Source: Schmidtea polychroa (taxonomy: Eukaryota). Taken from it: a stretch of DNA of 64,000 bases. The position numbers were made by a program, and so were the translations under genes. Where the stretch lies: the NCBI GenBank assembly GCA_044892525.1, contig CM097886.1, positions 167,140,312 through 167,204,311 on the forward strand, in the 5' to 3' direction. This document shows, piece after piece, positions 4,385 to 50,434 of the stretch (positions are counted from its first letter, which is position 1; the number at the start of each line of letters is the position of its first letter). The notes under the pieces are model-generated. The model saw only the letters and a program-made list of their open reading frames with translations. It searched no databases and had not been told where the DNA came from.

Positions 4385-5332
4385 ATGGTTATAAAAATCA
4401 TGAATAAAATCTGCAGTTTCTGTTTGGCCAGTAATTCTGTTTCAACTTGTATTATCAATTGTGACCATGAAGCTTGCTTCTCTTGTATTTTGGATCTTTG
4501 CATGGATGATATGATATGCCCGATAGATGGCGCCATAGTATTTTCAGTTCAAGTTCCAAAGTTCTATTCAAATATTCTTAGTGAAATCTCAATTGCAAAA
4601 TTTCCCAACTATAAAGTAGATTATGAAATCCGAGGTTGGCTAAAACAATGCCGAGAGCTCACAAGCGTATCCAATCATCACTTAAAGTTTTCCATGCATC
4701 AGTATTTCCAATTGTCATCAGAAATCGTCCATTTCTATGAGTCGGTATATGAAACTTATCAAACAACTGAAAAACATTATCAAACTTTGTTTAAAATTAT
4801 TGGAAAATCAACTAAAACATTAAAACAAGAAATTAAATTTGATTTCGCAAATAAAAATTTTCCGAAAATAAACGCCCTTTTAAAAAGTGAAAAACTCATA
4901 TGTGAAGAAAATGAAAAAAACATTGAAAAATGGATGAAAACATTTCAAAATTACAAAGTTTTCTATGAAAATCAAATGAAGACTTGTATCGAAAACAAGC
5001 AACAAGTTAAAAAACATAAGATAAACACTTTAAAAAAACCAATAAAATTAGTAAAAAAAATTTATAAAAATTTCCTTTTCCAGGTGAGATATTTTTACGA
5101 GAAGTTTGAAGAATTATTAACAAAATGGAAATGTCTATACTTGAAATTTTCAAAGGTGGAAAAATTCATTTTCGAAAAAGAACCCTTTGACTGTTTAAAG
5201 AACTTTTCTGTCACAAGTTTTACTTCTATTCCATTTGTCATAATGAGAAATTCTAAACATTACGAAGTTATGAGGATGAAACTCGTTGACAAGCTTGAAA
5301 AAGTTTTGAAATCGCTTGTAGAACAAGGATGA
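4385..5332 (+). CDS. Intronless RING (C3HC4) finger protein with a predicted coiled-coil C-terminal region
   Basis: ORF 4376-5332 (first ATG 4385, alternative 4400) has CSFC...C-x-H-x2-C-x2-C...CPID spacing, followed by a long K/E/Q-rich helical region. It has no internal stops in an AT-rich background. Confidence 0.7.
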   Translation: MVIKIMNKICSFCLASNSVSTCIINCDHEACFSCILDLCMDDMICPIDGAIVFSVQVPKFYSNILSEISIAKFPNYKVDYEIRGWLKQCRELTSVSNHHLKFSMHQYFQLSSEIVHFYESVYETYQTTEKHYQTLFKIIGKSTKTLKQEIKFDFANKNFPKINALLKSEKLICEENEKNIEKWMKTFQNYKVFYENQMKTCIENKQQVKKHKINTLKKPIKLVKKIYKNFLFQVRYFYEKFEELLTKWKCLYLKFSKVEKFIFEKEPFDCLKNFSVTSFTSIPFVIMRNSKHYEVMRMKLVDKLEKVLKSLVEQG

Positions 5333-16158: not shown

Positions 16159-17391
16159 CTAGCAGTAGGTAGAAATGCGCACTCCAGATCCATGTGCCTT
16201 CCAGATCTGGATACTTTTACTTACACACACACATTTTAAATTTTTAAAAAATACAAATTATTGATCTATACTTAAGAAAACTCATTCTGATATTAAAAAT
16301 GTATATTAAAAAATAAACATTTATTAAAATCCCAGATAAATTCGATTATTATCTCAAATCGGTGATATGACATTTTTCTCATCCATTTTATATCCCTGTA
16401 TTGAAATATTTACAAGCCAACATGTTTTAATTACAAAAATAGTTATCAATACATCGAGTAAGGATATCAAATTATTTAGAATCAATAAGTAACACACAGA
16501 CCTTAGTGTAATAGATGTTAATATATAATAAAATAAACCCACTCACATATATATATATATAGATTAAAACACGCACATATTAACATTATTTCATACATAC
16601 GCACAAATAAATATTATTCAATACATACAAGTCATAGAGGTTAAGCAGATAACAACCAATCAAAATCATGCATTGATATTGTATCTTTATTGCATGAGTA
16701 ATATCAAAACTGTAAAATTAATAAATTCTAATAGTATTTTAAACTATATTCAATCACTAATTATTGCAAAATAAAAAATTATTTCAGTTAATGGTTACAA
16801 AACTAATAAAAATATTACAATAAATCAAAACAACATAACGAAATATTTCAATAAATTACAATAATGTTATAAAGTATTCATTAAGTTGCAGTATAGTTGG
16901 AAATTATTTCGGTGAATGGCAACAATTTAATAAATAATTTACACTAAATTACCACAAAATTATGAAACCTTTCATTAAATTGCAACAAAGTAATAACATA
17001 TTTTGGAAAAATTCCCAACAGTTCTAAAATATTTAAGCAAATTGTAACAAGATTATAAAAATATTGCAGCAAGTAATAACATACCGATGACTATTCATAT
17101 TTTTTGATTATGTTTTTATTTGGGGTATGTGAAAACTTATATCAGTGTATTAATATCAATTCGAATTTCTGTTTGTCACAGTAAATAATATTAAATAAAA
17201 TTTCTCTCGGTTTTATGAACTTAAAAATAAATTATTATTGAAAATAAAAATTAAAAAATGTTAAAAAAAGGGGCGGTCTGTAAAAAAATCTTTAAAAAAA
17301 TGTGGGGTTGGGTATTTAAAATTTTTTTTAAAAAGGTATATAGATCTTGAAAGCACATGGATCTGGAGTGCACATTACTACCTACTTCTAG
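16159..17391. mobile_element. ~1.23-kb non-autonomous TIR element
   Basis: ~50-bp imperfect TIRs CTAGCAGTAGGTAGAAATGCGCACTCCAGATCCATGTGC / GCACATGGATCTGGAGTGCACATTACTACCTACTTCTAG, with CTAG (or a TA TSD) at both ends. No ORF. Confidence 0.7.
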
Positions 17392-20300: not shown

Positions 20301-20987
20301 TAATTTACACCAGTAGTGAATAGTAAGGACTCCAGGACACTTTCAAGGTCATCCCAATGTCCAGATCAAATATAGGTCAATCGAATCATTTTTTTTTTAA
20401 TTAACANNNNNNNNNNNNNNNNNNNNNNNNNNNNNNNNNNNNNNNNNNNNNNNNNNNNNNNNNNNNNNNNNNNNNNNNNNNNNNNNNNNNNNNNNNNNNN
20501 NNNNNNNNNNNNNNNNNNNNNNNNNNNNNNNNNNNATTATTTTATTATGCTTTTATTTTAGTATTATTTTATTATTTTATTATTTTATTTATTATTATTA
20601 TTTTTTTTTTTTTATTTTTTTTTTTATTTTTTTTTTTTTTTTTAATTTTACATTTACATTATATTCTAACAAGAGGTAAATTATAACGATAATATTTCAA
20701 TTTGAATAAAATTTTAATTAGTAATTATTCAATTTGAATAAATTTTAATTAGAAATTATTTAATTTATTATAAAATAAAACGCTGAGTTAATTTTAGATA
20801 AACTGGATATTAATATTTCGGAAAAAATAAATAAATAAATAAAATAAACACAAAAATAATATTTCTTACTTGAAACTAATTATCTAAATTAATTGGACAA
20901 ATGAATAATTAAATGATAAAACACATTTTAATTAACTAAGTCAAACAATTCACAATATATATTTTATTATTCATATAAATTTAATTG

Positions 20988-23900
20988 TTAAAGTGCTTGT
21001 TTCGATTTGCATTCATTTCTAGACATAGCAGTTGCAATATGCATTTGGCGAATCTTATAGTGACCGTAGGCATAACTTTCATTACAATTGTACCAATACC
21101 TTTTATCGTCCAAACATTGGAGAGCTCGTTTTTCTGTCATGAAAGTATACAACTGATGATTGACACTTCCTATTCTTTTTTGTGGGATGCTCACTGTTCC
21201 ACCATCAGTATACACTTTTTTATAGGCTTCATGTGTAAGATTAGAGTTTGTAAGTCTTATTCCTTTGGCTTTTAGAGTGTTTTTATCGCCTTGGAGTGAG
21301 TAGCACTTGGGTCGAAGAAACACCCATTCTTTATATTGATTTCCTTTATTCTCATCCTTGAATTTCCCGATTACCGAACAAATTTTATCTGAGAACAATG
21401 GATCAGTCACTGGATAATTTGAAGTATCTAGGAGCCCATCGGCAATCATTTTTGGATATAGTTGTAAGCGTAAATCTACATTTTTACACTCTAAAAAGAA
21501 GGAATCTGTGTCACCGGCTACGATATTAATTTGACAATTGAATTCTTCTCTATAACTCTGTAGTTCTTTATATTGAAACTGGTACATGCGAAGTTTGGAT
21601 AAATCAAGTACGGTTTGTCCAATATACATTGGTCTATCTAAACACACAATTTCCTTATTGAGTATAACAGCAATGAGATCATCCGCAATCTTGATGCTAC
21701 GACGAAACATAGGATTACTACAATAAGTTATCAATCTTTTGCTTTTGCTGCATAATCTCAAATTTATACGTTTCTTCAAGTTTTCCACAGTTTTACCGTA
21801 TAAACTGTTGTTCTTTAACTTATAATAATCTCGCTGAAACGAATCTGTACTAGCTGCTCTCATTTTGGTATTGTAATCAATATAGCCTTTGAAAATAGCC
21901 ACTTGCTTGAATTCTACAGCACGATTAACTTTTGTGACTTTTGCGCCGTAACTCAACCACTCTGTCAAAACTCTACCATTAACTACATAGTTTTTCTTAG
22001 GCTCATGAGTTAACAACAGCTTTTCAACTTTACTACCAGGTGGATAACAAAGCTCAGGAGCTATAGGTAAATCATCTAGTTTATCTTGTATACTATCAGG
22101 AATGACGATGTCAACCTCTAGAACATATCCAAGATCTCCATCAAACTTATCCCCATTTGCACATCTTTCAACAATACCATTCATTTCAGTCTGATCATTT
22201 ATCCATCTAAATTCACCAACAGGAAGTTTTTGCGACAGCGCCCATCCATATAAATTATTAACATCTAGGTATGACATTTGTGTTGATTCATCAGCTTCAA
22301 CATGATGTTTGTTGATAAATGTCATTCCACCACGAATACCAGCTTCAAATAAACGGTAAAGCTCTGGATCTTGAATAAGTTCTACTGGTTCAGGTAACTG
22401 TTTAATAGCTGATGCCCAACTTAATCCGGTTATGGAAACAAACGATAGAGCCTCAAGTCCATCTTCGTCAAATGTTTTTTCTCTGAAAGCTTCAAAAACA
22501 TCGGCCAACAGAAAAACATCCAACTTGAGATATACTAGCATGTAATCTAGCAGTGTCTCACAGTTGTATTGTCGCCAGATTCGATTTGCATGTATATAAT
22601 CTTCTTGACTAACTCCCTCCCAAATCGGTGGTAATTCTGTTATTGACTGTAAAACATCCATTGATGTAGCCATATCATAAGGAAATATGCCTTTACCAGT
22701 TATTAAATGCGAATTGAAAATCTTTGAAGTAAGTGGAAGACGTGGCAAGTTTTTTGATAAATTTGCCAAGCTGCTATTTAAAAATTGTAAAGAATCAATG
22801 AATCTAATTCTTCTGCCTTTCGATGTCGCTGTAAGTGTGAGAAACTTTTCTGTTGATTGAGGAATAACAATTAAATTCCAATCGGGGAATTTTCCAATTG
22901 CATATTTTAATATATGATGAATGTCATATCCACGAAGATTATGAAATACAACAGGTAAAGACGGATTGATTCTTCTAGCCAAATTACAATCTTGACACGC
23001 TGCTCCGAGATATTGACCAGTAAAATGATCATGATCTCGAACAGGTATATTGATAATCTTTTTACAAAGGTAGCAATGAGTTTGAGTCGTGAATTCTTCC
23101 TGCTGTTCCCAAGTGAGTTCCATCATTTCCTTCGATCCATTAATTTTATACCACGGATAAACTATGTCTGTAGCTATATCATCCAATGCTTGTATAAACT
23201 GAATGATACAGTTTTTCCCAACAAATGTTTCATTTCGAATCGGACAACCTTGATGAAGAAGCACAAATTCAGATGCAATCGGCTCATGTTTTTGGAAGTG
23301 CTTGTCATCTAGAGGTAATATTGATTCAAAGTCCGCGTAGACAACAAACTGCTGTTTTATAGTTTTACTCCAGTCTTTAAATTCGATATATTTATTCTCT
23401 GGCATTGAGTATAGAGTCGTCCGCTCCACATTCTTCCTACAAAGACCTATATGTCTTTCAAAAGCAGGACGTTTTTGAAACCCATGAAGACACGTATGAC
23501 ACCAATGTGATTGGATTCTGACTCCTTCTACTCTATCTCTGTAATTGAGCAGTCGATCGAGATTAGTTACAGCCAAAAAATGATAATTTAATTCTAAAAT
23601 TTAGTTAATATTTTTAATGATTAAAAGAAATATTACCTTCTTCAATCAATAAGAGATATAATTGACATCCCGTCGAAGTACTTCTATATACCAAGTCAAC
23701 GAACGGATTCTTGAAAATATCATTAGTTTTTTGTTTAATTGGATCTTTATTATATTTGAGAACATTGATCGCTAGATTAGGATTCATTGCCTCAAATTGG
23801 CAAATGTTAACCAACTTCATTGGAAACCAATCTGATTTCCATTTTAACTCTAAATATATATATTTTTAGAATGATATAAATATATATTACCACTTAAATT

Positions 23901-24962
23901 ATATTTCATTACTCTTTCTCTGTGATGTTTTATGTCATCATAATGTAATACGGCCAGTATGCTATATAAAAAGCAGAATTGATCATTATTTTGAACATTA
24001 ACTAAAGCCTGGCAGTTTTTCAGGTAATTTGGCGTTTTAATGTAACTTGAACCTAAGTAAATATCTTGATTTATATATATAATAATGTAAATAAACTTAC
24101 CAGATACATGTATTATGTCTGATAATTTAGTTAAAATCATAGTAACTTCTAATATTTTATGAATTCTCCACCCACTACTTTGTTGAGTGTATTTCTCCAA
24201 CTTTTCTTTTAATTTTTCAATTCCATCATTAATAAATGAAGATGACATTGTAATTGCTTTATTCGACAAACACCATTTTTAATTTCACCATCCTCTTTGA
24301 TAAACTCTGCACAAAGTCCAAATTGGATTTTTACTGTACCCATTCGTTGAATATGATCTTCTATTTCTCTGATGAGATAATCTGGAACAACAATGTCAGG
24401 AGAATTAATTGCAGATACATCGCTTGTCAATTCAACACGAGAACTATTTAAGTCAGACTCCCGACGTGGACACAATTGTATGTTAGAGTCTCCATTTCCG
24501 TAAAATATTGACTTTCGTTTTGTGGTACCAGAGTTTTGTCTAACTATATTTATAATTAATATTAAACAACTTAAATAACATAACTTGTAACATATTCTTT
24601 AATCTGCTTAGGATCGTATGATGTATTCATTTTCGGTTGTACTATAAAAAATTAATAATTGTTAATAGTAGAAAGAGTATTACTTTTAGTGATCATCCTG
24701 CTCTTCGTTTCTTCGAATCTTCTAAGATGGTGTCCGTGTTGTCGTACAAACATATACCACCTACCTGGTGATATAATGAGACATTCCGGACATATGTAAC
24801 CCGATAAGGTAGAGTCATTTATCTTGAAATATGATGATGTAACTGATTTACAGTTCTCCACATCTTCATGACTTTCGGCAATACAAAATTTATATAAACT
24901 GCATCCGTTCACTAAAAGAAAATAATCATTAATATTAGATAGAGAATAAAAAATTATTCACT
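20988..24962 (-). pseudogene. polB: Left-arm copy of the spliced pPolB gene with a 1-bp frameshift
   Basis: Mirror of 28581-32556. The run at 24276-24280 is T5 versus A6 at 29263-29268, which splits the 208-aa ORF into 24209-24475 and 23850-24269. The terminal exon ORF 20988-23576 has the same 862-aa translation as the right copy. The indel could be a homopolymer sequencing error. Confidence 0.75.
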
Positions 24963-24985
24963 TATATAAGTTAAATTAAAAGTTT

Positions 24986-25123
24986 AAATGACAAACATTT
25001 GAAAAGTTACTGCTTATATATTACACATGATTAAATTCTGACCAATCAAAATCAAGGAAGGGGTAGGAAAAATAAATATATTCTGACCAATCAAAATCAA
25101 GGAAGGGGTAGGAAAAATAAATG
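24986..25123 (-). promoter_or_regulatory. Left-arm mirror of the polB promoter (2x CCAAT, TATA, Inr)
   Basis: 45-bp duplication containing GACCAATC at 25035 and 25080; reverse complement of 28420-28557. Confidence 0.65.
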
Positions 25124-25249
25124 TGTTACAGTATTTTAAAAGTTCAATATATTTTAAAACACATTTTGATGCTAAAGTTGACTTATTTAACATTTTCATA
25201 ATAATTTAATAAAAATAATGTGATGAACCCACAAAGTAATATCATTTTT

Positions 25250-25675
25250 CATCAAATTGCAAAACAGTAATAACGTTTTCATAAAATTGTAACAAAATAA
25301 TAACATATTTCAGATAAATTTTCAACAGTTGTAAAATATTTAAACAAATTGTAACAAGATTAGAAAATATTACAACAAAGTAGTAACATATTTCAGAAAA
25401 TTTCAACAAAGTTGTAAAATATTTATCAAATTGTAACTAAAATAATAAAAATATTGCAACAAAGTAATAAAATAATGATGTTAATTGGGACAAATCAATA
25501 CATTATTTCGAAGACGGACAACAAATTAAAAAGAATATTGTAATAAATTGTGAAGTCTTTCAGTAAATTACAACAAAGTAATAACATATTTCGGAAATAT
25601 TTCACCAGATGTAAAATATTTAAGCAAAATGTTATAAGATTATAAAAATATTGCAACAAAGTAATAAAATAATAC
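25250..25675. repeat. Degenerate ~83-bp tandem repeat block inside the arm (mirror at ~27868-28293)
   Basis: Recurring AAATT(G/A)(C/T)AACAAAGTAATAACATATTTC and TGTAAAATATTTA motifs. Confidence 0.7.
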
Positions 25676-25693
25676 AACATTTTAAACTCTAGA

Positions 25694-26445
25694 TCAATCC
25701 ATTTTATAGAAAATTAAATTTTATCTCTATAATATATGAATAAATATACAAGGAAATTACGTTAACTGTATGAAAAATACAAATTTATCGTAAAAAACAT
25801 GTGTGTATTACACACAACATACAAGACATAATTTTTAATCAAGCTATTTTATAGAAAATTAAATTTTATCTATATAATATATGAATAAATATTCAAGGAA
25901 ATTACGTTAACGTATAATAAATACAAATTTATCATAAAAACATGTGTGTATTACACAAAAAAAAAACAAGATACATAATTTCTAATCAATCCATTTTATA
26001 GAAAATTAAATTTTATCTATATATTATATGAATAAAATCCTAAGAAAATTACGTTAACTATATGAAAAATACAAATTTATCTTAAAAACATGTGTGTATT
26101 ACACACAGAACAAGATACATAATTTCTAATCAATCCATTTTATAGAAAATTAAATTTTATCTATATATTATATGAATAAAATCCTAAGAAAATTACGTTA
26201 ACTGTATGAAAAATACAAATTTATCGTAAAAACATGTGTGTATTACACACAAAGCGACAAACTAAAATTGTAATTGAGCCATTTTATAGAAAATTAAATT
26301 TTATCTATATAATATATGAATAAAAATCCAAGAAAATTACGTTAACCGCGCGAAAAATACAAATTTATCGTAAAAACATGTGTGTATTACACACAAAGCG
26401 ACAAACTAAAATTGTAATTGAGCCATTTTGTAGAGAATTAAATTC
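25694..26445. repeat. Array of five 144-147-bp units plus a partial unit, each with internal palindromes (mirror at ~27098-27849)
   Basis: ATTTT(A/G)TAGA recurs at 25701, 25846, 25993, 26137, 26281 and 26425. Units carry TGTGTGTA-T-TACACA(CA) and ACGTTAAC palindromes. Confidence 0.9.
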
Positions 26446-26556
26446 TGCCTATACATGGTTACACTTAAATCCCAATCGAACAAAGAGAAAAGAGAGAAAA
26501 AGAGAGAGAAAAAACAGTAGAGTAGGGTATTGTGTGGACCCGGGAACAAAGACATA

Positions 26557-26576
26557 TGACGTCATCGATGACGTCA
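26557..26576. other. Perfect 20-bp palindrome TGACGTCATCGATGACGTCA (two CRE-like octamers) in the central spacer
   Basis: Direct reading; the direct repeat ACAAAGACATAT occurs on both sides. Confidence 0.85.
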
Positions 26577-26765
26577 CAAAGACATATTACNNNNNNNNNN
26601 NNNNNNNNNNNNNNNNNNNNNNNNNNNNNNNNNNNNNNNNNNNNNNNNNNNNNNNNNNNNNNNNNNNNNNNNNNNNNNNNNNNNNNNNNNNNNNNNNNNN
26701 NNNNNNNNNNNNNNNNNNNNNNNNNNNNNNNNNNNNNNNNNNNNNNNNNNNNNNNNNNNNNNNNN

Positions 26766-26941
26766 GTATTTTAAAATTTATATTACGTTGCGGTATTTTA
26801 AAATTTATATTACGTTGCGGTATTTTAAAATTTATATTACGTTGCGGTATTTTAAAATTTATATTACGTTGCGGTATTTTAAAATTTATATTACGTTGCG
26901 GTATTTTAAAATTTATATTACGTTGCGGTATTTTAAAATTT
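26766..26941. repeat. 27-bp tandem array (6.5 visible copies) in the central spacer
   Basis: Unit GTATTTTAAAATTTATATTACGTTGCG. The bases before the N-run end in ATATTAC, matching the unit, so the array may continue through 26591-26765. Confidence 0.95.
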
Positions 26942-28419
26942 AATTATATTTTATTCACATCATTCGTAAGGTCTTGAAGAGATCTATGCAAAGGTTTCAC
27001 CCGGGTCCACACAATACCCTACTCTACTGTTTTTCTCTCTCTTTTTCTCTCTTTTCTCTTTGTTCGATTGGGATTTAAGTGTAACCATGTATAGGCAGAA
27101 TTTAATTCTCTACAAAATGGCTAAATTACAATTTTAGTTTGTCGCTTTGTGTGTAATACACACATGTTTTTACGATAAATTTGTATTTTTCGCGCGGTTA
27201 ACGTAATTTTCTTGGATTTTTATTCATATATTATATAGATAAAATTTAATTTTCTATAAAATGGCTCAATTACAATTTTAGTTTGTCGCTTTGTGTGTAA
27301 TACACACATGTTTTTACGATAAATTTGTATTTTTCATACAGTTAACGTAATTTTCTTAGGATTTTATTCATATAATATATAGATAAAATTTAATTTTCTA
27401 TAAAATGGATTGATTAGAAATTATGTATCTTGTTCTGTGTGTAATACACACATGTTTTTAAGATAAATTTGTATTTTTCATATAGTTAACGTAATTTTCT
27501 TAGGATTTTATTCATATAATATATAGATAAAATTTAATTTTCTATAAAATGGATTGATTAGAAATTATGTATCTTGTTTTTTTTTTGTGTAATACACACA
27601 TGTTTTTATGATAAATTTGTATTTATTATACGTTAACGTAATTTCCTTGAATATTTATTCATATATTATATAGATAAAATTTAATTTTCTATAAAATAGC
27701 TTGATTAAAAATTATGTCTTGTATGTTGTGTGTAATACACACATGTTTTTTACGATAAATTTGTATTTTTCATACAGTTAACGTAATTTCCTTGTATATT
27801 TATTCATATATTATAGAGATAAAATTTAATTTTCTATAAAATGGATTGATCTAGAGTTTAAAATGTTGTATTATTTTATTACTTTGTTGCAATATTTTTA
27901 TAATCTTATAACATTTTGCTTAAATATTTTACATCTGGTGAAATATTTCCGAAATATGTTATTACTTTGTTGTAATTTACTGAAAGACTTCACAATTTAT
28001 TACAATATTCTTTTTAATTTGTTGTCCGTCTTCGAAATAATGTATTGATTTGTCCCAATTAACATCATTATTTTATTACTTTGTTGCAATATTTTTATTA
28101 TTTTAGTTACAATTTGATAAATATTTTACAACTTTGTTGAAATTTTCTGAAATATGTTACTACTTTGTTGTAATATTTTCTAATCTTGTTACAATTTGTT
28201 TAAATATTTTACAACTGTTGAAAATTTATCTGAAATATGTTATTATTTTGTTACAATTTTATGAAAACGTTATTACTGTTTTGCAATTTGATGAAAAATG
28301 ATATTACTTTGTGGGTTCATCACATTATTTTTATTAAATTATTATGAAAATGTTAAATAAGTCAACTTTAGCATCAAAATGTGTTTTAAAATATATTGAA
28401 CTTTTAAAATACTGTAACA

Positions 28420-28557
28420 CATTTATTTTTCCTACCCCTTCCTTGATTTTGATTGGTCAGAATATATTTATTTTTCCTACCCCTTCCTTGATTTTGATTG
28501 GTCAGAATTTAATCATGTGTAATATATAAGCAGTAACTTTTCAAATGTTTGTCATTT
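28420..28557 (+). promoter_or_regulatory. Predicted RNA polymerase II promoter of polB
   Basis: Reverse CCAAT boxes (ATTGG) at 28452 and 28497 within a 45-bp duplication. TATATAAG at 28523-28530 and Inr-like TCATTT at 28552-28557, with its A 31 nt after the first T of the TATA box. Confidence 0.7.
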
Positions 28558-28580
28558 AAACTTTTAATTTAACTTATATA

Positions 28581-31500
28581 AGTGAATAATTTTTTATTCT
28601 CTATCTAATATTAATGATTATTTTCTTTTAGTGAACGGATGCAGTTTATATAAATTTTGTATTGCCGAAAGTCATGAAGATGTGGAGAACTGTAAATCAG
28701 TTACATCATCATATTTCAAGATAAATGACTCTACCTTATCGGGTTACATATGTCCGGAATGTCTCATTATATCACCAGGTAGGTGGTATATGTTTGTACG
28801 ACAACACGGACACCATCTTAGAAGATTCGAAGAAACGAAGAGCAGGATGATCACTAAAAGTAATACTCTTTCTACTATTAACAATTATTAATTTTTTATA
28901 GTACAACCGAAAATGAATACATCATACGATCCTAAGCAGATTAAAGAATATGTTACAAGTTATGTTATTTAAGTTGTTTAATATTAATTATAAATATAGT
29001 TAGACAAAACTCTGGCACCACAAAACGAAAGTCAATATTTTACGGAAATGGAGACTCTAACATACAATTGTGTCCACGTCGGGAGTCTGACTTAAATAGT
29101 TCTCGTGTTGAATTGACAAGCGATGTATCTGCAATTAATTCTCCTGACATTGTTGTTCCAGATTGTCTCATCAGAGAAATAGAAGATCATATTCAACGAA
29201 TGGGTACAGTAAAAATCCAATTTGGACTTTGTGCAGAGTTTATCAAAGAGGATGGTGAAATTAAAAAATGGTGTTTGTCGAATAAAGCAATTACAATGTC
29301 ATCTTCATTTATTAATGATGGAATTGAAAAATTAAAAGAAAAGTTGGAGAAATACACTCAACAAAGTAGTGGGTGGAGAATTCATAAAATATTAGAAGTT
29401 ACTATGATTTTAACTAAATTATCAGACATAATACATGTATCTGGTAAGTTTATTTACATTATTATATATATAAATCAAGATATTTACTTAGGTTCAAGTT
29501 ACATTAAAACGCCAAATTACCTGAAAAACTGCCAGGCTTTAGTTAATGTTCAAAATAATGATCAATTCTGCTTTTTATATAGCATACTGGCCGTATTACA
29601 TTATGATGACATAAAACATCACAGAGAAAGAGTAATGAAATATAATTTAAGTGGTAATATATATTTATATCATTCTAAAAATATATATATTTAGAGTTAA
29701 AATGGAAATCAGATTGGTTTCCAATGAAGTTGGTTAACATTTGCCAATTTGAGGCAATGAATCCTAATCTAGCGATCAATGTTCTCAAATATAATAAAGA
29801 TCCAATTAAACAAAAAACTAATGATATTTTCAAGAATCCGTTCGTTGACTTGGTATATAGAAGTACTTCGACGGGATGTCAATTATATCTCTTATTGATT
29901 GAAGAAGGTAATATTTCTTTTAATCATTAAAAATATTAACTAAATTTTAGAATTAAATTATCATTTTTTGGCTGTAACTAATCTCGATCGACTGCTCAAT
30001 TACAGAGATAGAGTAGAAGGAGTCAGAATCCAATCACATTGGTGTCATACGTGTCTTCATGGGTTTCAAAAACGTCCTGCTTTTGAAAGACATATAGGTC
30101 TTTGTAGGAAGAATGTGGAGCGGACGACTCTATACTCAATGCCAGAGAATAAATATATCGAATTTAAAGACTGGAGTAAAACTATAAAACAGCAGTTTGT
30201 TGTCTACGCGGACTTTGAATCAATATTACCTCTAGATGACAAGCACTTCCAAAAACATGAGCCGATTGCATCTGAATTTGTGCTTCTTCATCAAGGTTGT
30301 CCGATTCGAAATGAAACATTTGTTGGGAAAAACTGTATCATTCAGTTTATACAAGCATTGGATGATATAGCTACAGACATAGTTTATCCGTGGTATAAAA
30401 TTAATGGATCGAAGGAAATGATGGAACTCACTTGGGAACAGCAGGAAGAATTCACGACTCAAACTCATTGCTACCTTTGTAAAAAGATTATCAATATACC
30501 TGTTCGAGATCATGATCATTTTACTGGTCAATATCTCGGAGCAGCGTGTCAAGATTGTAATTTGGCTAGAAGAATCAATCCGTCTTTACCTGTTGTATTT
30601 CATAATCTTCGTGGATATGACATTCATCATATATTAAAATATGCAATTGGAAAATTCCCCGATTGGAATTTAATTGTTATTCCTCAATCAACAGAAAAGT
30701 TTCTCACACTTACAGCGACATCGAAAGGCAGAAGAATTAGATTCATTGATTCTTTACAATTTTTAAATAGCAGCTTGGCAAATTTATCAAAAAACTTGCC
30801 ACGTCTTCCACTTACTTCAAAGATTTTCAATTCGCATTTAATAACTGGTAAAGGCATATTTCCTTATGATATGGCTACATCAATGGATGTTTTACAGTCA
30901 ATAACAGAATTACCACCGATTTGGGAGGGAGTTAGTCAAGAAGATTATATACATGCAAATCGAATCTGGCGACAATACAACTGTGAGACACTGCTAGATT
31001 ACATGCTAGTATATCTCAAGTTGGATGTTTTTCTGTTGGCCGATGTTTTTGAAGCTTTCAGAGAAAAAACATTTGACGAAGATGGACTTGAGGCTCTATC
31101 GTTTGTTTCCATAACCGGATTAAGTTGGGCATCAGCTATTAAACAGTTACCTGAACCAGTAGAACTTATTCAAGATCCAGAGCTTTACCGTTTATTTGAA
31201 GCTGGTATTCGTGGTGGAATGACATTTATCAACAAACATCATGTTGAAGCTGATGAATCAACACAAATGTCATACCTAGATGTTAATAATTTATATGGAT
31301 GGGCGCTGTCGCAAAAACTTCCTGTTGGTGAATTTAGATGGATAAATGATCAGACTGAAATGAATGGTATTGTTGAAAGATGTGCAAATGGGGATAAGTT
31401 TGATGGAGATCTTGGATATGTTCTAGAGGTTGACATCGTCATTCCTGATAGTATACAAGATAAACTAGATGATTTACCTATAGCTCCTGAGCTTTGTTAT

Positions 31501-32556
31501 CCACCTGGTAGTAAAGTTGAAAAGCTGTTGTTAACTCATGAGCCTAAGAAAAACTATGTAGTTAATGGTAGAGTTTTGACAGAGTGGTTGAGTTACGGCG
31601 CAAAAGTCACAAAAGTTAATCGTGCTGTAGAATTCAAGCAAGTGGCTATTTTCAAAGGCTATATTGATTACAATACCAAAATGAGAGCAGCTAGTACAGA
31701 TTCGTTTCAGCGAGATTATTATAAGTTAAAGAACAACAGTTTATACGGTAAAACTGTGGAAAACTTGAAGAAACGTATAAATTTGAGATTATGCAGCAAA
31801 AGCAAAAGATTGATAACTTATTGTAGTAATCCTATGTTTCGTCGTAGCATCAAGATTGCGGATGATCTCATTGCTGTTATACTCAATAAGGAAATTGTGT
31901 GTTTAGATAGACCAATGTATATTGGACAAACCGTACTTGATTTATCCAAACTTCGCATGTACCAGTTTCAATATAAAGAACTACAGAGTTATAGAGAAGA
32001 ATTCAATTGTCAAATTAATATCGTAGCCGGTGACACAGATTCCTTCTTTTTAGAGTGTAAAAATGTAGATTTACGCTTACAACTATATCCAAAAATGATT
32101 GCCGATGGGCTCCTAGATACTTCAAATTATCCAGTGACTGATCCATTGTTCTCAGATAAAATTTGTTCGGTAATCGGGAAATTCAAGGATGAGAATAAAG
32201 GAAATCAATATAAAGAATGGGTGTTTCTTCGACCCAAGTGCTACTCACTCCAAGGCGATAAAAACACTCTAAAAGCCAAAGGAATAAGACTTACAAACTC
32301 TAATCTTACACATGAAGCCTATAAAAAAGTGTATACTGATGGTGGAACAGTGAGCATCCCACAAAAAAGAATAGGAAGTGTCAATCATCAGTTGTATACT
32401 TTCATGACAGAAAAACGAGCTCTCCAATGTTTGGACGATAAAAGGTATTGGTACAATTGTAATGAAAGTTATGCCTACGGTCACTATAAGATTCGCCAAA
32501 TGCATATTGCAACTGCTATGTCTAGAAATGAATGCAAATCGAAACAAGCACTTTAA
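28581..32556 (+). CDS. polB: Protein-primed family B DNA polymerase with N-terminal extension, C2H2-like finger and inserted endonuclease VII-like domain; 7 exons, 1236 aa
   Basis: Coding exons 28581, 28632-28859, 28902-28958, 29000-29443, 29492-29653, 29695-29907 and 29951-32556 total 3711 nt with no internal stop; all introns are GT-AG. Motifs: ExoI YADFES, EndoVII-like CYLC..RDHDHFTGQYLGAACQDCN, ExoII FHNLRGYD, ExoIII YLKLD, PolA YLDVNNLYG, PolB KLKNNSLYGK, PolC GDTDS, and KCY. The last exon (ORF 29968-32556) is near certain; the two most 5' introns are less so. Confidence 0.9.
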
Positions 32557-32575
32557 CAATTAAATTTATGTGAAT

Positions 32576-32581
32576 AATAAA
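32576..32581 (+). promoter_or_regulatory. Candidate polyadenylation signal of polB
   Basis: AATAAA 20 nt after the stop codon; weak evidence in AT-rich DNA. Confidence 0.4.
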
Positions 32582-34260
32582 ATATATATTGTGAATTGTT
32601 TGACTTAGTTAATTAAAATGTGTTTTATCATTTAATTATTCATTTGTCCAATTAATTTAGATAATTAGTTTCAAGTAAGAAATATTATTTTTGTGTTTAT
32701 TTTATTTATTTATTTATTTTTTCCGAAATATTAATATCCAGTTTATCTAAAATTAACTCAGCGTTTTATTTTATAATAAATTAAATAATTTCTAATTAAA
32801 ATTTATTCAAATTGAATAATTACTAATTAAAATTTTATTCAAATTGAAATATTATCGTTATAATTTACCTCTTGTNNNNNNNNNNNNNNNNNNNNNNNNN
32901 NNNNNNNNNNNNNNNNNNNNNNNNNNNNNNNNNNNNNNNNNNNNNNNNNNNNNNNNNNNNNNNNNNNNNNNNNNNNNNNNNNNNNNNNNNNNNNNNNNNN
33001 NNNNNNNNNNNNNNNNNNNNNNNNNAATAAAATAATNNNNNNNNNNNNNNNNNNNNNNNNNNNNNNNNNNNNNNNNNNNNNNNNNNNNNNNNNNNNNNNN
33101 NNNNNNNNNNNNNNNNNNNNNNNNNNNNNNNNNNNNNNNNNNNNNNNNNNNNNNNNNNNNNNNNTGTTAATTAAAAAAAAAATGATTCGATTGACCTATA
33201 TTTGATCTGGACATTGGGATGACCTTGAAAGTGTCCTGGAGTCCTTACTATTCACTACTTACACCCACCAAATTAAGAAAACAATATATAAATAATTAAA
33301 TAAATTGGGAACAATAAATATTTTTATTTTTTTTAGATTTGAAAGAAAATACTCTTTGTTAGCCCAAAAGAAATGACTATTTTTTTTGCTGTTTTATGTT
33401 TGAATTTTTAATTTTAATTCATTGAAATAAATTTATCTATAAAAATTTGGAACTGTTGCTCGGTATTTAATAAAACGTTTTTGATGATTATCTCAATTAG
33501 ATAATCTCAGACTTATGGAGGCATCAAAAGTCAATAGAAAAAGAAATATTAAATGATTTAATAATTAAATAATCAACTCATTCTAACAGAAAGTTTTTAT
33601 CGCAGGTTTTTTGTTNNNNNNNNNNNNNNNNNNNNNNNNNNNNNNNNNNNNNNNNNNNNNNNNNNNNNNNNNNNNNNNNNNNNNNNNNNNNNNNNNNNNN
33701 NNNNNNNNNNNNNNNNNNNNNNNNNNNNNNNNNNNNNNNNNNNNNNNNNNNNNNNNNNNNNNNNNNNNNNNNNNNNNNNNNNNNNNNNNGCGCGCGTTAT
33801 ACGCATTTTTACAAACCGTGCACCCCCCATGCGCGGTATCTGTGGGTGCGCGCTTTATGATTTATATTTTACACGTGGCGGCATGGCCAGTGGAAATATT
33901 TTTATGATGTGACAGTAACCCTACCATCGGTTTTATTGTTTATTGTAATCAGATACCGCGCGCNNNNNNNNNNNNNNNNNNNNNNNNNNNNNNNNNNNNN
34001 NNNNNNNNNNNNNNNNNNNNNNNNNNNNNNNNNNNNNNNNNNNNNNNNNNNNNNNNNNNNNNNNNNNNNNNNNNNNNNNNNNNNNNNNNNNNNNNNNNNN
34101 NNNNNNNNNNNNNNNNNNNNNNNNNNNNNNNNNNNNNNNNNNNNNNNNNNNNNNNNNNNNNNNNNNNNNNNNNNNNNNNNCACTGATTTTCGTTCAATTG
34201 ACATTTGATATTCGTGAATATCAAAAAAACATCGATATATTTACTAATTCATAGTCAGGA

Positions 34261-46418: not shown

Positions 46419-46828
46419 TGTGGTTAAATTCAGCGCGCCGTCAAAAGACTCTCTCCGAATTATTCCCCGAAAATCCTTCTGTGAATTATTCCCCGTAAAT
46501 TACTTCTTAAAATCCAAAAGAAACACAATTCAGCGACAATACGTTTATTAACAATTAAATATTATAACAATTATATTTGAATCGATACATTATCAATTTC
46601 CAACATTAAACTTAAGAAAGAACCCGATCGTATGAGTCGCCGCGGTGGCAACAATTAAAACAAACATCAGAATAATAATATTACATATATTTTAACATTT
46701 TAATTCCAACTTTCTCATAATGCTCCCTTGCACTCTACAACACAAAATATTAAACTTTTCAACATTCGAACTATAATCAGTTTTAAAACATTTAATTATA
46801 ACAAACTTAAATTACCCTTTTACTCACA
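46419..46828 (-). repeat. 3' LTR
   Basis: Direct repeat of 50447-50856 with at least 3 substitutions; the polypurine tract is adjacent (TCCCCCGAG on +, 46829-46837). Confidence 0.95.
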
Positions 46829-46860
46829 TCCCCCCGAGTTTGTCAAGTAAGCACACACTC

Positions 46861-49541
46861 TTATTCGTTGCGTGCTCGTATATTTTTAACATGCATACAT
46901 ACCCCATCAACAGAAACATTCCATGCCGAATTTACATCTGTTACCACACCTTCTCTCCACTCATCCATGCAAGTCGCATCACCACCCTTTACATGAACGA
47001 CATCACCAACTCGAAACTTTCCACTCGTTTCATTGTCCCGATCTCTTTCAACATTTTCGTCATTCAACTCGTATGCATATATGGAAGCAAATGGCACGGA
47101 GCATTCATCTTGACCCTCGCGCGGCGACGCATTATACCAAAACAGCATTTCTTCCACAGTTCCCCGCGTTCGAGCCACCATCCTTTTTATTGTCCTGTGG
47201 TTACGTTCCACAATTCCATTTCCAGAAGGTTCATACGCACATCTATACATATGCTTTACTTTCCATTCATCACAAAATTTTCTCAATGCATCGCTTTTAA
47301 ACGCTCCTCCATTATCACTAAGTAATTCTCTGCAAAACCCTCTTTCGAACATGGTTTTTCTTATCGCATTCAACACGCTTCGTCCACTTTCATCTTTCAA
47401 CTCATGCCATATTGCATACCTCCCGGGTCCGCAGTCCACTACCGACAAATACTTCTTTCCCTCCAAATGCACAACATCCACTGCTATTCTGACCCACGTG
47501 CCACCCACGCTCAACTCACCTTTCGGCATTCTACACGCATGCGGATCAACGGTAGCACACTTAAAACAATTTCTCACGACCGCCTCCACGTCCTTTCGTT
47601 TAACCACGTCAAATTTCTTTTTTACAAAATACATGGTTCGATCAACGCCAAAATGATGTTTTTCATGCTCTAATGTTATTTGATCCACTTCAACACTCGC
47701 GCACGCATGCGTTCCGCGATTATGCCCCACTCTCGTCAATGCATCCGCCTTATTCGCTCCCGATGGAATCCATTCGACAGTAACATTCAAACCGTAATCG
47801 GTAATCATTTCCTCAATTATATCCAATCTTCGCTTTATCAAGTATTCGTGCATACCCTTCACGTGCACCTTTTTCGATTTTGTCAACAGAGCTTTGATCC
47901 ACGCCACGACCGAAGTTGAATCGCATTTCACCGTTATATCGGCGAATTTCCATTCAATTGCCATCGCCACGCCTTTTATGAAGGCGTCCAATTCAGCCAC
48001 GTTTATGTGTTTCACCTCGTCAACTTTTCGAAGCCATACTGCATCTTCCACACATTTTTCATTTTGCTCCACGTACACCGCCATCGCAACTCTGCTCGCA
48101 TCCGTATATACTGTAACATTTCCATTTCCATCCACGCTCCATACCCCCTGCGCTGGATCCTCACGTTCTATACGTTTCAGCAGCATTTTTATATCTCGTT
48201 TCGTTTCGTCGCCTGCATAATCATCCCATTTAGTACCCTTCATATTTCTTTTAATTACGCTACACTCAAGTCGCAACGATCCACATATAGGATAATGCCC
48301 TATGACTTTTCCGCATATTGAAAACACATCTCGACGCGAACAACTTTTTGTTTCACATTTCAAATCACCCAAGGGACCACGCCCCCACCATCGCTTGCCA
48401 TCCTTCTTCCCTTGCAACTGCAACCTAGTATTCGCATGTCATCGACATCTTCGTGATCCTTTGTCACTAATCCATATTGCTTCAAATGATTCACAACTTC
48501 GCATTCCGTAATTCCATTCAAATTCACAATTATGTCATCAACGTAGTGTGAAGTATTCTCATTAACTTTCGAGTTCAACTTGAGAACGTACGACACTATA
48601 CCATCCATTATCTTCGGCGCACTCTTCAATCCGAATCCCAATCGCGTAAGTCGATAACGCGTTTTGTTGTGTGACACTGTCTGATACTTCCATAGCGACT
48701 CTTCAACATGAATTTGCAAGTACGCTCGCTTTAAGTCAACCACTGCCACGTTGTCGCCCATTTTTCGCCATCTTCTCAGCTCAGACCTGCATTCCTGCGC
48801 ATCACCTGTGTGACTACTCACGCTCTTATTTACCGATTTATAGTTCAACACTGGTCTCACTTTGTCTTTCTTCTGCTGCACCACAGCAATCAACGGCAAT
48901 ATACCTTCTACGTTTTCATCCGTTTGCACCAATATGCCTTATTTTATCCATGCATCAATTTCTTCATCGAATGTGTTCTTCGTTTCTTGCGATATCCCAT
49001 AATTTGCAACATTTTCATGCAAGATCGGTTCTCGTTCGTTCCACAACCATCTAACCGTCCACTTATCTCCATCAAACCACGCCTCATAATCCGGATCACT
49101 AATTTTATGTTCGACCGACATCACCGCCCTAACGCCGCAACCAACACTTTTCCCATTATCGAACTTCACACCTTCTGACGTTACACGCATTCCGCCCATT
49201 TTCGTCAATACATCCATTCCCACTATAATATCGATTCCTTCCAACATCTCAGCCAACACTATACACTGCACATTCATTCGTTCACCTACCATGTCCAACA
49301 CAACACGTCGCATTTCACCACTCTCCCCGCATTTTCCGTTTGCAAGCAATAATCTCACGCTACACGTTTCATGATCACCTTCTTTCGACACACCATTTCT
49401 CAACAACATGTGCGAACAGCCTGTGTCGATCAACGCCCTACACCGCACGCCGTCCACCGTCACCTCCATTACATTATTCGCGCTTACCTGTCCACACGGA
49501 CGTCCGCCAGCGCACGCGAACTCCGTTGCTCGTTTCCCCAC
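46861..49541 (-). pseudogene. pol: pol (protease, RT, RNase H, integrase) with one nonsense and one frameshift lesion
   Basis: Protease LIDTGCS; RT YVDD; RNase H YTDAS / HINVAELD / CDS / ADALTR; integrase HHCC and VDVV..SDNG..GIVER. An in-frame TAA at 48939-48941 separates same-frame ORFs 48939-49541 and 48360-48932, and a frameshift near 48423 leads into ORF 46861-48423. Confidence 0.9.
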
Positions 49542-50302
49542 ACGTCGCGTTCATTTTCATCAATTGGCGTTTTCCGCATTCCATAACGTTCACCGCATGC
49601 GTTCGCCATATGATTCTCGTTCCCGCAAATATGGCATTTCCGCACAAACCCTGTCCGATTACGAAAACAATTTCGTGCCAAATGCCCCTGTTTTCCGCAG
49701 TTGTAACACACGACACTTCTTACCATGTCGTCACGCACGATCGCGCAGCTTTGCACACTCGTCCCAGTGGCCGTTATCGCTTTCGCTACTCCGACAACGT
49801 CTTCCAACGTTAAACTGTCTTCGTTGGGCATTGCCTTAATCGCATTCGACACAGATTTTGGCAGACCACACACAAAGGCACACTTGATCACGTCTTTCGA
49901 TTCTATTCCCGCGCTCTTCGCTAATCTCTTCAAGTTTATGGAATACAAATCTACCTTATCACTCACACATTTCAAGTTGACAAACATTTCATACGCTGTA
50001 TATTTGTTTATGCCAAATGTTTTACGCAACGCCGATTCCACACCCCCTTTCACGTCTCGTTCTTCCTCAGACATATTCATATACACGCTGAAGGCCGAAC
50101 CATCCAACAATAGCGGCATAATGCGTCTCGTGTCTTTAATGCCTTGCACATCGCACACCATTCTAACTCGTTCCAACCATTCCTCAACATCCAAACTCCC
50201 ATCATACTTCGTCACAACATTTAACACCCTTATAGACGACTTCACCGCGTCTTCATCCCGAATCCCCCCTTCATTCATTCCACTTTTTACTTTACTTGTC
50301 AT
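49484..50302 (-). CDS. gag: Gag with two CCHC zinc knuckles
   Basis: ATG at 50302 within ORF 49484-50383; CYNCGKQGHLARNC and CHICGNENHMANAC. Confidence 0.9.
   Translation of the reverse strand: MTSKVKSGMNEGGIRDEDAVKSSIRVLNVVTKYDGSLDVEEWLERVRMVCDVQGIKDTRRIMPLLLDGSAFSVYMNMSEEERDVKGGVESALRKTFGINKYTAYEMFVNLKCVSDKVDLYSINLKRLAKSAGIESKDVIKCAFVCGLPKSVSNAIKAMPNEDSLTLEDVVGVAKAITATGTSVQSCAIVRDDMVRSVVCYNCGKQGHLARNCFRNRTGFVRKCHICGNENHMANACGERYGMRKTPIDENERDVWGNEQRSSRALADVRVDR
49532..49538 (-). promoter_or_regulatory. -1 ribosomal frameshift slippery site G GGA AAC
   Basis: The heptamer is in the gag frame (TGG GGA AAC); a -1 shift enters the pol frame (GGG AAA CGA = GKR). GC-rich sequence follows. Confidence 0.75.
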
Positions 50303-50434
50303 TTCAAAACAATTTATTTTAAAAATCGAATTTTTTAAATTGTTTTTAATAATAAAATGTTCCCAATACTTTTTACAAATCAAACTATTGAAAAGCTATT
50401 TTATGTATCATTCAAAGTACAAAAAAAATATCTT

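What the first reader, a model, noticed from the sequence alone, without database searches (positions are those of the whole stretch)
20312..33259. A fully palindromic, polymerase-only Polinton integrated with a clean 6-bp TSD
Seen: the insertion has AGTAGT/ACTACT ends and a TACACC TSD with different outer flanks, and ~96% of its length is two inverted ~6.2-kb arms, each with one pPolB gene pointing outward. No integrase, capsid, ATPase or protease ORF is visible. Established: canonical Polintons have much shorter TIRs around a multi-gene core including a retroviral-like integrase. Inference: this is either a snap-back (copy-back) product of protein-primed strand-displacement replication, analogous to viral defective-interfering genomes, or the integrated dimer of a minimal hairpin-ended linear replicon. 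In either case both ends are valid origins and integrase substrates, and integration must have been supplied in trans. A family of such elements would be a distinct non-autonomous, self-replicating class. I do not recall this architecture being described, but I cannot check the literature.
Basis: partly seen in the sequence, partly recalled or inferred. Interest (0 to 1): 0.92.

Follow-up and report, generated by a model that had tools for sequence, protein, structure and literature searches.

The report
Polymerase-only, long-armed Polinton derivative
A 12.9-kb virus-like transposon insertion consists almost wholly of two mirror-image copies of its DNA polymerase end and lacks the integrase and capsid genes; this looks like a fold-back replication or repair product, but it rests on one locus in a gappy assembly.

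Summary
Window 20312-33259 has the canonical Polinton/Maverick ends (AGTAGT..ACTACT) and a direct 6-bp duplication (TACACC). Its outer flanks are unique and unrelated. It is built of two inverted arms of about 6.2 kb, each carrying a protein-primed polymerase (pPolB) gene that reads outward.

Three corrections:
- The arms are about 99.9% identical, not identical.
- The 455-nt centre is not palindromic and contains an unread gap.
- The polymerase gene is in three coding blocks in the right arm and four in the left.

No integrase, ATPase or capsid gene of canonical relatives is detectable in the read sequence. A new point is that both arm/centre junctions fall on CCCGGG. This self-complementary hexamer occurs only three times in the 64 kb, which is the signature of fold-back priming.

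My best reading is a real copy-back derivative of a Polinton. Whether it formed on an extrachromosomal replicating copy and was integrated in trans, or formed in place after integration, cannot be decided from this sequence. Misassembly, or a core hidden in the central gap, stays at roughly 30% combined. I found no second copy with this architecture, so "a family" or "a class" is unsupported. Protein-primed linear plasmids have described hairpin/duplex deletion derivatives, so this is a new variant of a known kind.

The parts
20306..20311 (.). Left copy of the 6-bp target-site duplication, TACACC
20312..33259 (.). Whole insertion, 12,948 positions including four N-runs. Ends are AGTAGT / ACTACT.
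   Evidence: The end motif is as reported for Mavericks (PMC8097293).
33260..33265 (.). Right copy of the 6-bp target-site duplication, TACACC
20312..26544 (.). Left arm. It holds the 95-nt read terminus, an N-run, a low-complexity T-rich stretch, the polymerase gene on the minus strand, and tandem repeats. It ends in CCCGGG.
27000..33259 (.). Right arm, the inverted copy of the left arm. Over 5,877 aligned nt there are 4 substitutions and 2 single-base length differences.
20988..24888 (-). Left pPolB gene (terminal-protein-like domain, candidate vOTU, exonuclease, polymerase), given as one part. There are four coding blocks with three frame switches against single-ORF relatives. That is one more switch than the right copy. 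The 862-aa catalytic ORF is uninterrupted.
28655..32556 (+). Right pPolB gene, given as one part. There are three coding blocks with two frame switches; whether these are introns or frameshifts is not resolved. The 862-aa catalytic ORF is uninterrupted and identical in protein to the left copy.
25035..26444 (.). Non-coding tandem-repeat region of the left arm, upstream of the polymerase gene. Repeat periods are 45, about 31, 83 and 144 bp.
27099..28508 (.). The same tandem-repeat region in the right arm
26539..26544 (.). CCCGGG at the inner tip of the left arm (arm/centre junction)
   Evidence: Only 3 CCCGGG occur in the 64 kb.
27000..27005 (.). CCCGGG at the inner tip of the right arm (arm/centre junction)
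26545..26999 (.). Asymmetric centre of 455 positions, 175 of them unread
26557..26576 (.). 20-nt perfect palindrome holding two TGACGTCA motifs, flanked by two direct copies of ACAAAGACA
26591..26765 (.). Central N-run (unread; not filled, not looked up)
26766..26946 (.). 27-bp x 6.7 tandem array that begins exactly at the gap edge

Best explanation
This is a real, recently formed, non-autonomous derivative of a Polinton/Maverick. It consists of the polymerase-proximal end of a canonical element, duplicated in inverted orientation around a short loop.

**Proposed formation**
1. DNA synthesis started at the terminus next to the 3' end of the polymerase gene.
2. It ran inward through the gene, the upstream tandem repeats, a first CCCGGG, the 455-nt centre and a second CCCGGG.
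3. The 3' end then folded back. CCCGGG is self-complementary, so the end paired with the first CCCGGG on the same strand.
4. Synthesis copied the arm back out to the terminus.

The product is a self-complementary strand (a hairpin). Once copied, it becomes a linear duplex with two identical, valid termini. It keeps the gene for terminal protein plus polymerase and has lost the integrase and the virion genes.

I take the event to have happened on an extrachromosomal, protein-primed replicating copy. On that reading, an integrase from a complete element of the same family inserted the product, which made the 6-bp duplication.

**Shown:** the anatomy, ends, duplication, junction hexamers and gene content.
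**Inferred:** the fold-back step, the extrachromosomal stage and integration in trans.
For: - **Ends and duplication.** Canonical ends with a direct 6-bp duplication and unrelated unique flanks. This means one two-ended unit sits at one target site.
- **Arms.** They are 6.2 kb and about 99.9% identical. The 4 substitutions and 2 length differences show they are two separately read sequences, not one contig used twice.
- **Junctions.** Both arm/centre junctions are CCCGGG. The third and only other copy in the 64 kb lies in an unrelated retrotransposon. Fold-back priming at short inverted repeats is an established route to inverted duplications (PMC7467729, PMC10766183, PMC10622511, seen).
- **Polymerase.** Pfam DNA_pol_B_2 at 1.8e-30. 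Homologues 59-62% identical sit in canonical Polintons with rve integrase, packaging-ATPase-like and other core genes.
- **Relative with the same end.** In L016 the polymerase is the last gene and reads outward to the element end, as in each arm here.
- **Nothing else encoded.** None of the relatives' other proteins hits the window.
- **Terminal-protein-like domain.** The N-terminal part of the gene is present. It models with mean pLDDT 86 as a domain whose best matches are an adintovirus protein (5.9e-9), a MELD-virus PolB, and Y-family polymerase little-finger domains. That is the terminal-protein domain described for Polinton polymerases (PMC11071308).
- **Central gap.** A 27-bp tandem array abuts it, which gives an ordinary reason for an assembly break there.
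Against: - This is a single locus. No second copy with the same architecture, and no other insertion site, was found in the window, in 16 related loci or in the collections searched.
- The assembly is gappy, with 14 N-runs in 64 kb. Each terminus is joined to its arm only across a gap, and the centre is partly unread.
- No helper element lies in the window.
- The sequence alone cannot separate an extrachromosomal origin from an in-place rearrangement.
- The polymerase gene has 2 frame switches in the right copy and 3 in the left against single-ORF relatives. 'Self-replicating' is therefore not shown.
- The scheme needs two CCCGGG sites 455 nt apart in the parent, and no parent sequence is available to check this.
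Confidence: 0.4

Rival explanations
1. The structure is real but was made in place. A canonical Polinton integrated here, which created the duplication. Later a break inside it was repaired using the element's own other end as template. The left terminal repeat primed on the right one, and synthesis ran inward through the polymerase gene. The new strand rejoined the other broken end at the palindromic microhomology CCCGGG. This replaced the integrase/capsid side by an inverted copy of the polymerase side (terminal-repeat expansion with deletion). No extrachromosomal replication and no trans-integration are needed.
For: The final sequence would be identical: same ends, same duplication, same CCCGGG junctions. 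Host-polymerase fold-back and template-switch repair producing inverted duplications is well documented (PMC10622511, PMC7467729). No other copy of the palindromic form was found, so nothing shows that it moved as a unit.
Against: It requires two separate steps on one molecule: an inverted intramolecular invasion over a short terminal repeat, then a microhomology rejoin. A single strand fold-back during end-primed synthesis is simpler, and it has a described precedent in protein-primed plasmids. This is a weak argument; the sequence itself gives no direct evidence against the rival.
Confidence: 0.25
2. Assembly artefact. One arm is wrongly placed or wrongly duplicated. For example, a fold-back chimeric read or contig, or a contig from another copy in the genome, was scaffolded between a true left terminal repeat and the true right half. 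The real insertion would then be an ordinary Polinton or a simple truncated copy.
For: The window has 14 N-runs. Two of them lie just 95 nt inside each terminus, so the joins between flank-plus-terminus and the arms rest on scaffolding. The centre also has a gap. Long near-perfect inverted repeats are hard to assemble and to clone. Amplification with a strand-displacing polymerase is known, from my own knowledge, to give inverted chimeras at microhomologies.
Against: The duplication is direct and the flanks differ. A fold-back chimera that included the flank would not give that. The arms differ by 4 substitutions and 2 length differences and carry different gap patterns, so they were read separately. 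Both sides of the centre are contiguous with an arm. A chimera junction would have to be chosen consistently by the assembler.
Confidence: 0.2
3. It is a complete Polinton with unusually long (6.2-kb) terminal repeats. Its unique core (integrase, ATPase, capsid, protease) lies unread inside the N-run 26591-26765, whose length is underestimated.
For: The read parts of the centre on the two sides of the gap are unrelated to each other, as the two edges of a unique core would be. The program's note says the gap length is only an estimate.
Against: The symmetric pair of N-runs near the termini has nearly the same length in both arms (129 and 128). That suggests the lengths carry real information, so 175 is unlikely to stand for 8 kb or more; this is inference. 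A 27-bp tandem array starts exactly at the gap edge, which gives a simpler reason for the break. The read centre shows no coding signal.
Confidence: 0.1

Closest known systems
Polinton / Maverick self-synthesising transposons (polintoviruses, adintoviruses)
   Same: - (AGT)2/(ACT)2 ends and a 6-bp target duplication (PMC8097293).
- A protein-primed family-B polymerase with an Endonuclease-VII-like zinc module.
- An N-terminal terminal-protein-like domain (PMC11071308).
- Polymerases 59-62% identical lie in canonical elements.
   Different: - No rve integrase, ATPase, capsid or protease gene in the read sequence.
- The inverted terminal sequences are about 6.2 kb, against reported ranges of 46-1,447 bp and 100-1,500 bp.
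- Two copies of the polymerase gene.
- Total length of 12.9 kb, at the bottom of the reported 13-25 kb range.
Hairpin and palindromic-duplex deletion derivatives of protein-primed linear plasmids. Examples are the kalilo derivative (Vierula & Bertrand 1992, title seen) and the pGKL1-derived 'hairpin plasmid', which I recall from memory and did not find in the library.
   Same: A protein-primed replicon has lost one side. It carries the other side twice in inverted orientation, so both ends are the same origin.
   Different: Those derivatives are extrachromosomal molecules of fungal mitochondria or cytoplasm, shown physically. This one is integrated in a nuclear-type chromosome with a target duplication. 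No physical form has been seen, and there is a 455-nt asymmetric loop.
Copy-back (snap-back) defective viral genomes
   Same: The inferred origin is a polymerase turning back on its own product. The result has complementary ends and has lost essential genes, so it depends on a complete helper.
   Different: The classic cases are RNA viruses (review PMC13506859, listed). No interference, packaging or helper dependence is shown here. This element keeps the replicase gene rather than losing it.
[quoted passage not shown]
   Same: The junctions lie at a pair of short inverted repeats with a spacer that becomes the loop (PMC10766183, PMC7467729, PMC10622511).
   Different: Those events duplicate host chromosome segments and are made by host polymerases. 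Here the duplicated unit ends exactly at transposon termini.

Membership tests
Polinton/Maverick (autonomous) | [quoted passage not shown] | tested here: met
   Pfam DNA_pol_B_2 at 1.8e-30. There are 2,991 homologues, and the closest full-length ones lie in canonical elements.
Polinton/Maverick (autonomous) | Retrovirus-like (rve) integrase. [quoted passage not shown] | tested here: not met
   The integrases of L002, L012 and L015 gave no tblastn hit in the window. Pfam found nothing in the arm ORFs. The only rve in the window belongs to an LTR retrotransposon at 46.8-50.4 kb. The unread 175-position gap is not excluded.
Polinton/Maverick (autonomous) | Virion module: major and minor capsid proteins, packaging ATPase, maturation protease | tested here: not met
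   None of the relatives' non-polymerase proteins hits the window.
Polinton/Maverick (autonomous) | Terminal inverted repeats with (AGT)2 or (AG)3 ends, and a 6-bp target-site duplication | tested here: met
   The motifs are as in PMC8097293.
Polinton/Maverick (autonomous) | Terminal repeats of about 50-1,500 bp around a unique multi-gene core | tested here: not met
   The arms are 6,233 and 6,260 positions and the centre is 455.
Non-autonomous Polinton derivative | Polinton termini and duplication, with part of the gene set lost | tested here: met
Polinton-type pPolB domain order (terminal protein, vOTU, exonuclease, polymerase; PMC11071308) | N-terminal terminal-protein-like domain | tested here: met
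   The arms cover residues 26-1145 of the 1,158-aa relative P0003. The model has mean pLDDT 86. Fold matches are an adintovirus protein (5.9e-9), a MELD-virus PolB (1.5e-4) and, weakly (E about 1e-2), Y-family polymerase little-finger domains.
Polinton-type pPolB domain order (terminal protein, vOTU, exonuclease, polymerase; PMC11071308) | vOTU cysteine-protease domain with catalytic Cys and His | tested here: inconclusive
   An invariant Cys is present in the 60-sequence alignment. There is no Pfam hit. The His was not located, and the domain runs across a change of coding block.
Polinton-type pPolB domain order (terminal protein, vOTU, exonuclease, polymerase; PMC11071308) | One uninterrupted reading frame, or a demonstrated splice pattern | tested here: inconclusive
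   There are 2 frame switches in the right copy and 3 in the left against single-ORF relatives. Some relatives are also split into an upstream and a downstream ORF. No transcript data exist and I built no splice model.
Hairpin/duplex derivatives of protein-primed linear replicons | One end of the parent present twice in inverted orientation, with the other side deleted | tested here: met
Hairpin/duplex derivatives of protein-primed linear replicons | Extrachromosomal hairpin and dimer molecules with protein-linked 5' ends | not testable with these tools
   Only an integrated copy in an assembly is available.
Copy-back defective genome | Dependence on, and interference with, a complete helper | not testable with these tools
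   No helper lies in the window, and the rest of the genome is not available.

The most novel reading that the evidence does not exclude
Palindromic, integrase-less elements that encode only the terminal-protein-plus-polymerase gene form a recurrent family. They replicate themselves and borrow the integrase, and perhaps the capsid, of complete Polintons. This integrated copy would then be a sequence fossil of the extrachromosomal, end-primed replication stage. That stage has been assumed for Polintons since their discovery but has never been observed.
Probability: 0.15. Interest if true: 0.8.

Novelty: new variant of a known kind. Interest (0 to 1): 0.55.

Why it matters
Polintons are thought to copy themselves by protein-primed synthesis from their ends, but the evidence is almost entirely gene content. 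A derivative whose anatomy is what end-primed synthesis followed by fold-back predicts, and which then integrated with a normal target duplication, would be indirect sequence evidence for that replicative stage. It would also be evidence that integrase can act in trans on such molecules.

It would also suggest a route by which the polymerase module changes orientation relative to the core, as seen among the relatives here. And it would show how very long terminal repeats arise in this class. If it turns out to be an in-place rearrangement or a misassembly, it is an ordinary degraded transposon copy.

Tried and rejected
- **Other examples of the architecture.**
  - A metagenome scan with the polymerase gave 7 short contigs. 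A viral-contig scan gave none.
  - The exact terminal 22-mer was absent from viral and prokaryotic genome contigs. An exact-protein look-up of the window's ORF was not on record.
  - Large inverted repeats were absent from L001, L002, L003, L012, L015 and L016.
- **Host identification.**
  - There are no tRNA genes and no Rfam hits.
  - The retrotransposon pol has its best hit at 72% in an unnamed metagenome protein. Named hits reach only 44% or less, in molluscs, crustaceans and Hydra.
  - A 318-aa RING-like ORF has no homologue. The host stays unknown: an AT-rich (about 24% GC) eukaryote with animal-type transposons.
- **Paralogous empty site.** The flanks are unique in the window.
- **Fold-back read artefact including the flank.** Rejected, because the duplication is direct and the flanks are unrelated.
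- **Two independent adjacent insertions.** Rejected, because the outer ends share one 6-bp duplication.
- **One contig used twice.** Rejected, because the arms differ at 6 positions.
- **Solved structures.** A sequence search with the polymerase gave no hit.
- **Literature.** Five searches found no paper that pairs Polinton or pPolB with a palindromic or long-repeat architecture.
- **ACAAAGACA motif in the centre.** Two copies is not beyond chance.


Full report
**1. What is there**

The insertion runs from 20312 to 33259. It begins AGTAGTGA and ends TCACTACT. The hexamer TACACC lies directly outside each end. These are the (AGT)2/(ACT)2 end motif and the 6-bp target duplication reported for Mavericks/Polintons (PMC8097293).

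- The outer flanks are unique in the window and are not inverted copies of one another.
- The duplication is direct. This is therefore one two-ended unit at one target site, not a fold-back artefact that swallowed the flank.
- At about 38% A, 38% T, 12% G and 12% C, a 6/6 match has a chance probability near 1e-3 (my calculation).

**2. The arms**

The repeat finder reports inverted arms that together cover 20312-26544 and 27000-33259, which is 96.5% of the element. The printed '100%' is rounding.

- A gapped comparison of 5,877 aligned bases gives 4 substitutions and 2 single-base length differences.
- None of the six differences lies in the 2.6-kb polymerase ORF, and the two ORFs give identical proteins. 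With six differences spread at random the chance of that is about 0.03, which is a weak hint only.
- The differences matter for another reason. Together with the different gap patterns, they show that the two arms are separately read sequences.

**3. The gaps**

The window has 14 N-runs of 128-217 positions, and four lie in the element.

- **Terminal gaps.** Two sit 95 nt inside each terminus and are 129 and 128 long. After each comes the same 11-nt island in both arms.
- **Right-arm gap.** A third gap occurs in the right arm only. It corresponds in position to a low-complexity T-rich stretch that is read in the left arm.
- **Central gap.** The fourth is central, at 26591-26765.

Continuity cannot be shown. 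The termini are joined to the arms only across gaps, which is the main weakness of the locus. No meaningful ORF crosses a gap; the 199-aa 'ORF' through the central gap is a mechanical run of X. A 27-bp x 6.7 tandem array starts exactly at the right edge of the central gap. That gives an ordinary reason for an assembly break there.

**4. The centre and the junctions**

The centre, 26545-26999, is not palindromic.

- To the left of the gap there is a 20-nt perfect palindrome with two TGACGTCA motifs, between two copies of ACAAAGACA.
- To the right there is the 27-bp array and about 50 nt of unique sequence.
- Both arms end at their inner tip in CCCGGG, at 26539-26544 and 27000-27005.

This hexamer occurs only three times in the 64 kb, and the third copy is in an unrelated retrotransposon. 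It is self-complementary. A 3' end that finishes in CCCGGG can pair with an earlier CCCGGG on the same strand. That is the requirement for fold-back priming, which leaves the stretch between the two sites as the loop. I regard this as the strongest single piece of evidence that the inverted structure was made by a polymerase turning back, by whichever polymerase and at whichever stage.

**5. Gene content**

Each arm has an uninterrupted 862-aa ORF that reads outward and ends about 700 nt from the terminus. It matches Pfam DNA_pol_B_2 (1.8e-30) and, weakly, Endonuclease_7.

*Relatives.* There are 2,991 homologues, and most full-length ones are 1,100-1,300 aa. The closest (59-62% identity) lie in canonical Polintons that carry an rve integrase, a Pox_A32-like ATPase, a TBP-like gene and a dozen other ORFs (L002, L012, L015, L016). 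A 1.9-kb metagenome contig (L004) is 97.7% identical in DNA to the polymerase gene. The polymerase lineage therefore exists in at least one other sample.

*Rest of the gene.* Upstream of the 862-aa ORF the arms encode the remainder of the protein. Together the blocks cover residues 26-1145 of the 1,158-aa relative P0003.

*Breaks, counted against single-ORF relatives.*

| Copy | Coding blocks | Frame switches |
|---|---|---|
| Right | 3 | 2 |
| Left | 4 | 3 |

The extra switch in the left copy is caused by one of the single-base length differences. Several relatives are also split into an upstream and a downstream ORF. One in-frame, AT-rich insert absent from relatives is modelled with pLDDT below 50, so short introns are plausible. 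I built no splice model and joined nothing. Whether either copy is intact is open.

*N-terminal domain.*
- The upstream 208-aa ORF, modelled with a 60-sequence alignment, has mean pLDDT 86.
- Its first 120 residues form a beta-alpha-beta domain.
- The best matches among viral models are an adintovirus protein (5.9e-9) and a MELD-virus PolB.
- Among solved structures the best matches, at a weak E of about 1e-2, are the little-finger domains of Y-family polymerases.
- That is the terminal-protein domain described for Polinton polymerases, which have the order terminal protein, vOTU protease, exonuclease, polymerase (PMC11071308).
- An invariant Cys is a candidate for the vOTU active site.

*What is absent.* No protein of the three canonical relatives other than the polymerase finds anything in the window. 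The small ORFs of the arms have no Pfam match. 'Polymerase-only' therefore holds for everything that is read.

**6. How it compares with canonical relatives**

In L016 the polymerase is the last gene and reads outward towards the element's end, as in each arm here. In L012 and L015 the polymerase converges on the core genes and is preceded by 3-4 kb of non-coding tandem repeats. That resembles the repeat-rich region upstream of the gene in the arms. The orientation of the polymerase module therefore varies within this lineage. L002 carries two divergent polymerase genes 626 bp apart, but they are only 50% identical. No relative has near-identical inverted arms.

**7. Explanation and rivals**

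- **Best reading (0.4).** This is a copy-back product of end-primed synthesis on a free linear copy. It folded at the CCCGGG pair, was converted to a duplex with two identical ends, and was inserted by an integrase from a complete element.
- **Made in place (0.25).** The same sequence would result if an integrated canonical element suffered an internal break that was repaired using its own other end as template, with rejoining at CCCGGG. In that case the duplication dates from the original insertion and nothing need have acted in trans.
- **Scaffolding error (0.2).**
- **Core hidden in the central gap (0.1).**

The last two cannot be excluded without reads. The direct duplication, the differing flanks, the six differences between the arms, the near-equal lengths of the symmetric gaps and the tandem array at the gap edge all speak against them.

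**8. Known or new**

- Reported terminal repeats are 46-1,447 bp in vertebrate Mavericks, and 100-1,500 bp in general.
- Polintons are defined by polymerase plus integrase (PMC5499653 abstract).
- Five full-text searches found no description of a palindromic or polymerase-only Polinton. The library lacks most subscription journals and Repbase.
- The principle is not new. [quoted passage not shown]
- From memory, a similar hairpin plasmid derived from pGKL1 and inverted-repeat defective adenovirus genomes have been described. I could not verify these here.
- Fold-back priming at short inverted repeats is standard chromosome biology.

I therefore class this as a new variant of a known kind.

- Before I knew that the register shift between the two repeat segments lay inside the polymerase gene, I displayed both arms around it.
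- The script printed alignment bounds of relatives' proteins on the window. These show where coding blocks change.
- The ORF tables do the same, by the tool's own output.

I have not used these to join, repair or restore anything.

Noticed in passing
window 46800-50450, minus strand: A Ty3/gypsy-type LTR retrotransposon. Its domains are a gag with CCHC knuckle, aspartic protease, reverse transcriptase and RNase H-integrase. Its GC is 38-45% against about 24% around it, with a strong negative GC skew. Its coding capacity lies in four successive ORFs rather than one or two. The closest protein is 72% identical and comes from an unnamed metagenome entry.
   Followed up: partly
window 16843-17089: A 250-nt stretch outside the element is 72-86% identical to the 83-bp-period repeat region inside the arms (about 25245-25672). 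Part of the arms' non-coding interior therefore belongs to a dispersed repeat, or a fragment of a related element lies 3.3 kb upstream.
   Followed up: partly
L002 3-2213 (-) and 2839-6315 (+): A canonical relative's contig carries two polymerase genes head to head, 626 bp apart. They are only 50% identical to each other, and one is cut by the contig end. The layout is divergent as in the window, but it is not a recent duplication.
   Followed up: partly
L016 versus L012 and L015: The polymerase module has opposite orientation relative to the core genes in different canonical members of this lineage. In L016 it is the last gene and co-directional with the core. In L012 and L015 it converges on the core.
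   Followed up: no
window, whole: There are 14 N-runs of 128-217 positions in 64 kb. The two nearest the element's termini are symmetric (95 nt in, 129 and 128 long), which suggests the run lengths carry information. Whether they are scaffold gaps or masks could not be told.
   Followed up: partly
window 4376-5332 (+): A 318-aa single ORF with a RING-like Cys/His pattern at its N-terminus. It has no Pfam family and no homologue at E <= 0.001 in the large protein collection.
   Followed up: partly
both arms, polymerase ORF versus the rest: All six differences between the arms lie outside the 2.6-kb catalytic ORF, which makes up 44% of the compared length. The chance of this is about 0.03. It could reflect selection, gene conversion, or read errors concentrating in AT-rich non-coding sequence.
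   Followed up: no
one search hit list: Most of the closest full-length polymerase homologues sit on contigs of only 3.8-7.5 kb that hold little beyond the gene. This is what collapsed arms of similar elements would give in a metagenome assembly. It is equally expected from the skew of contig lengths. The one contig examined (L001) has no terminal repeats.
   Followed up: partly
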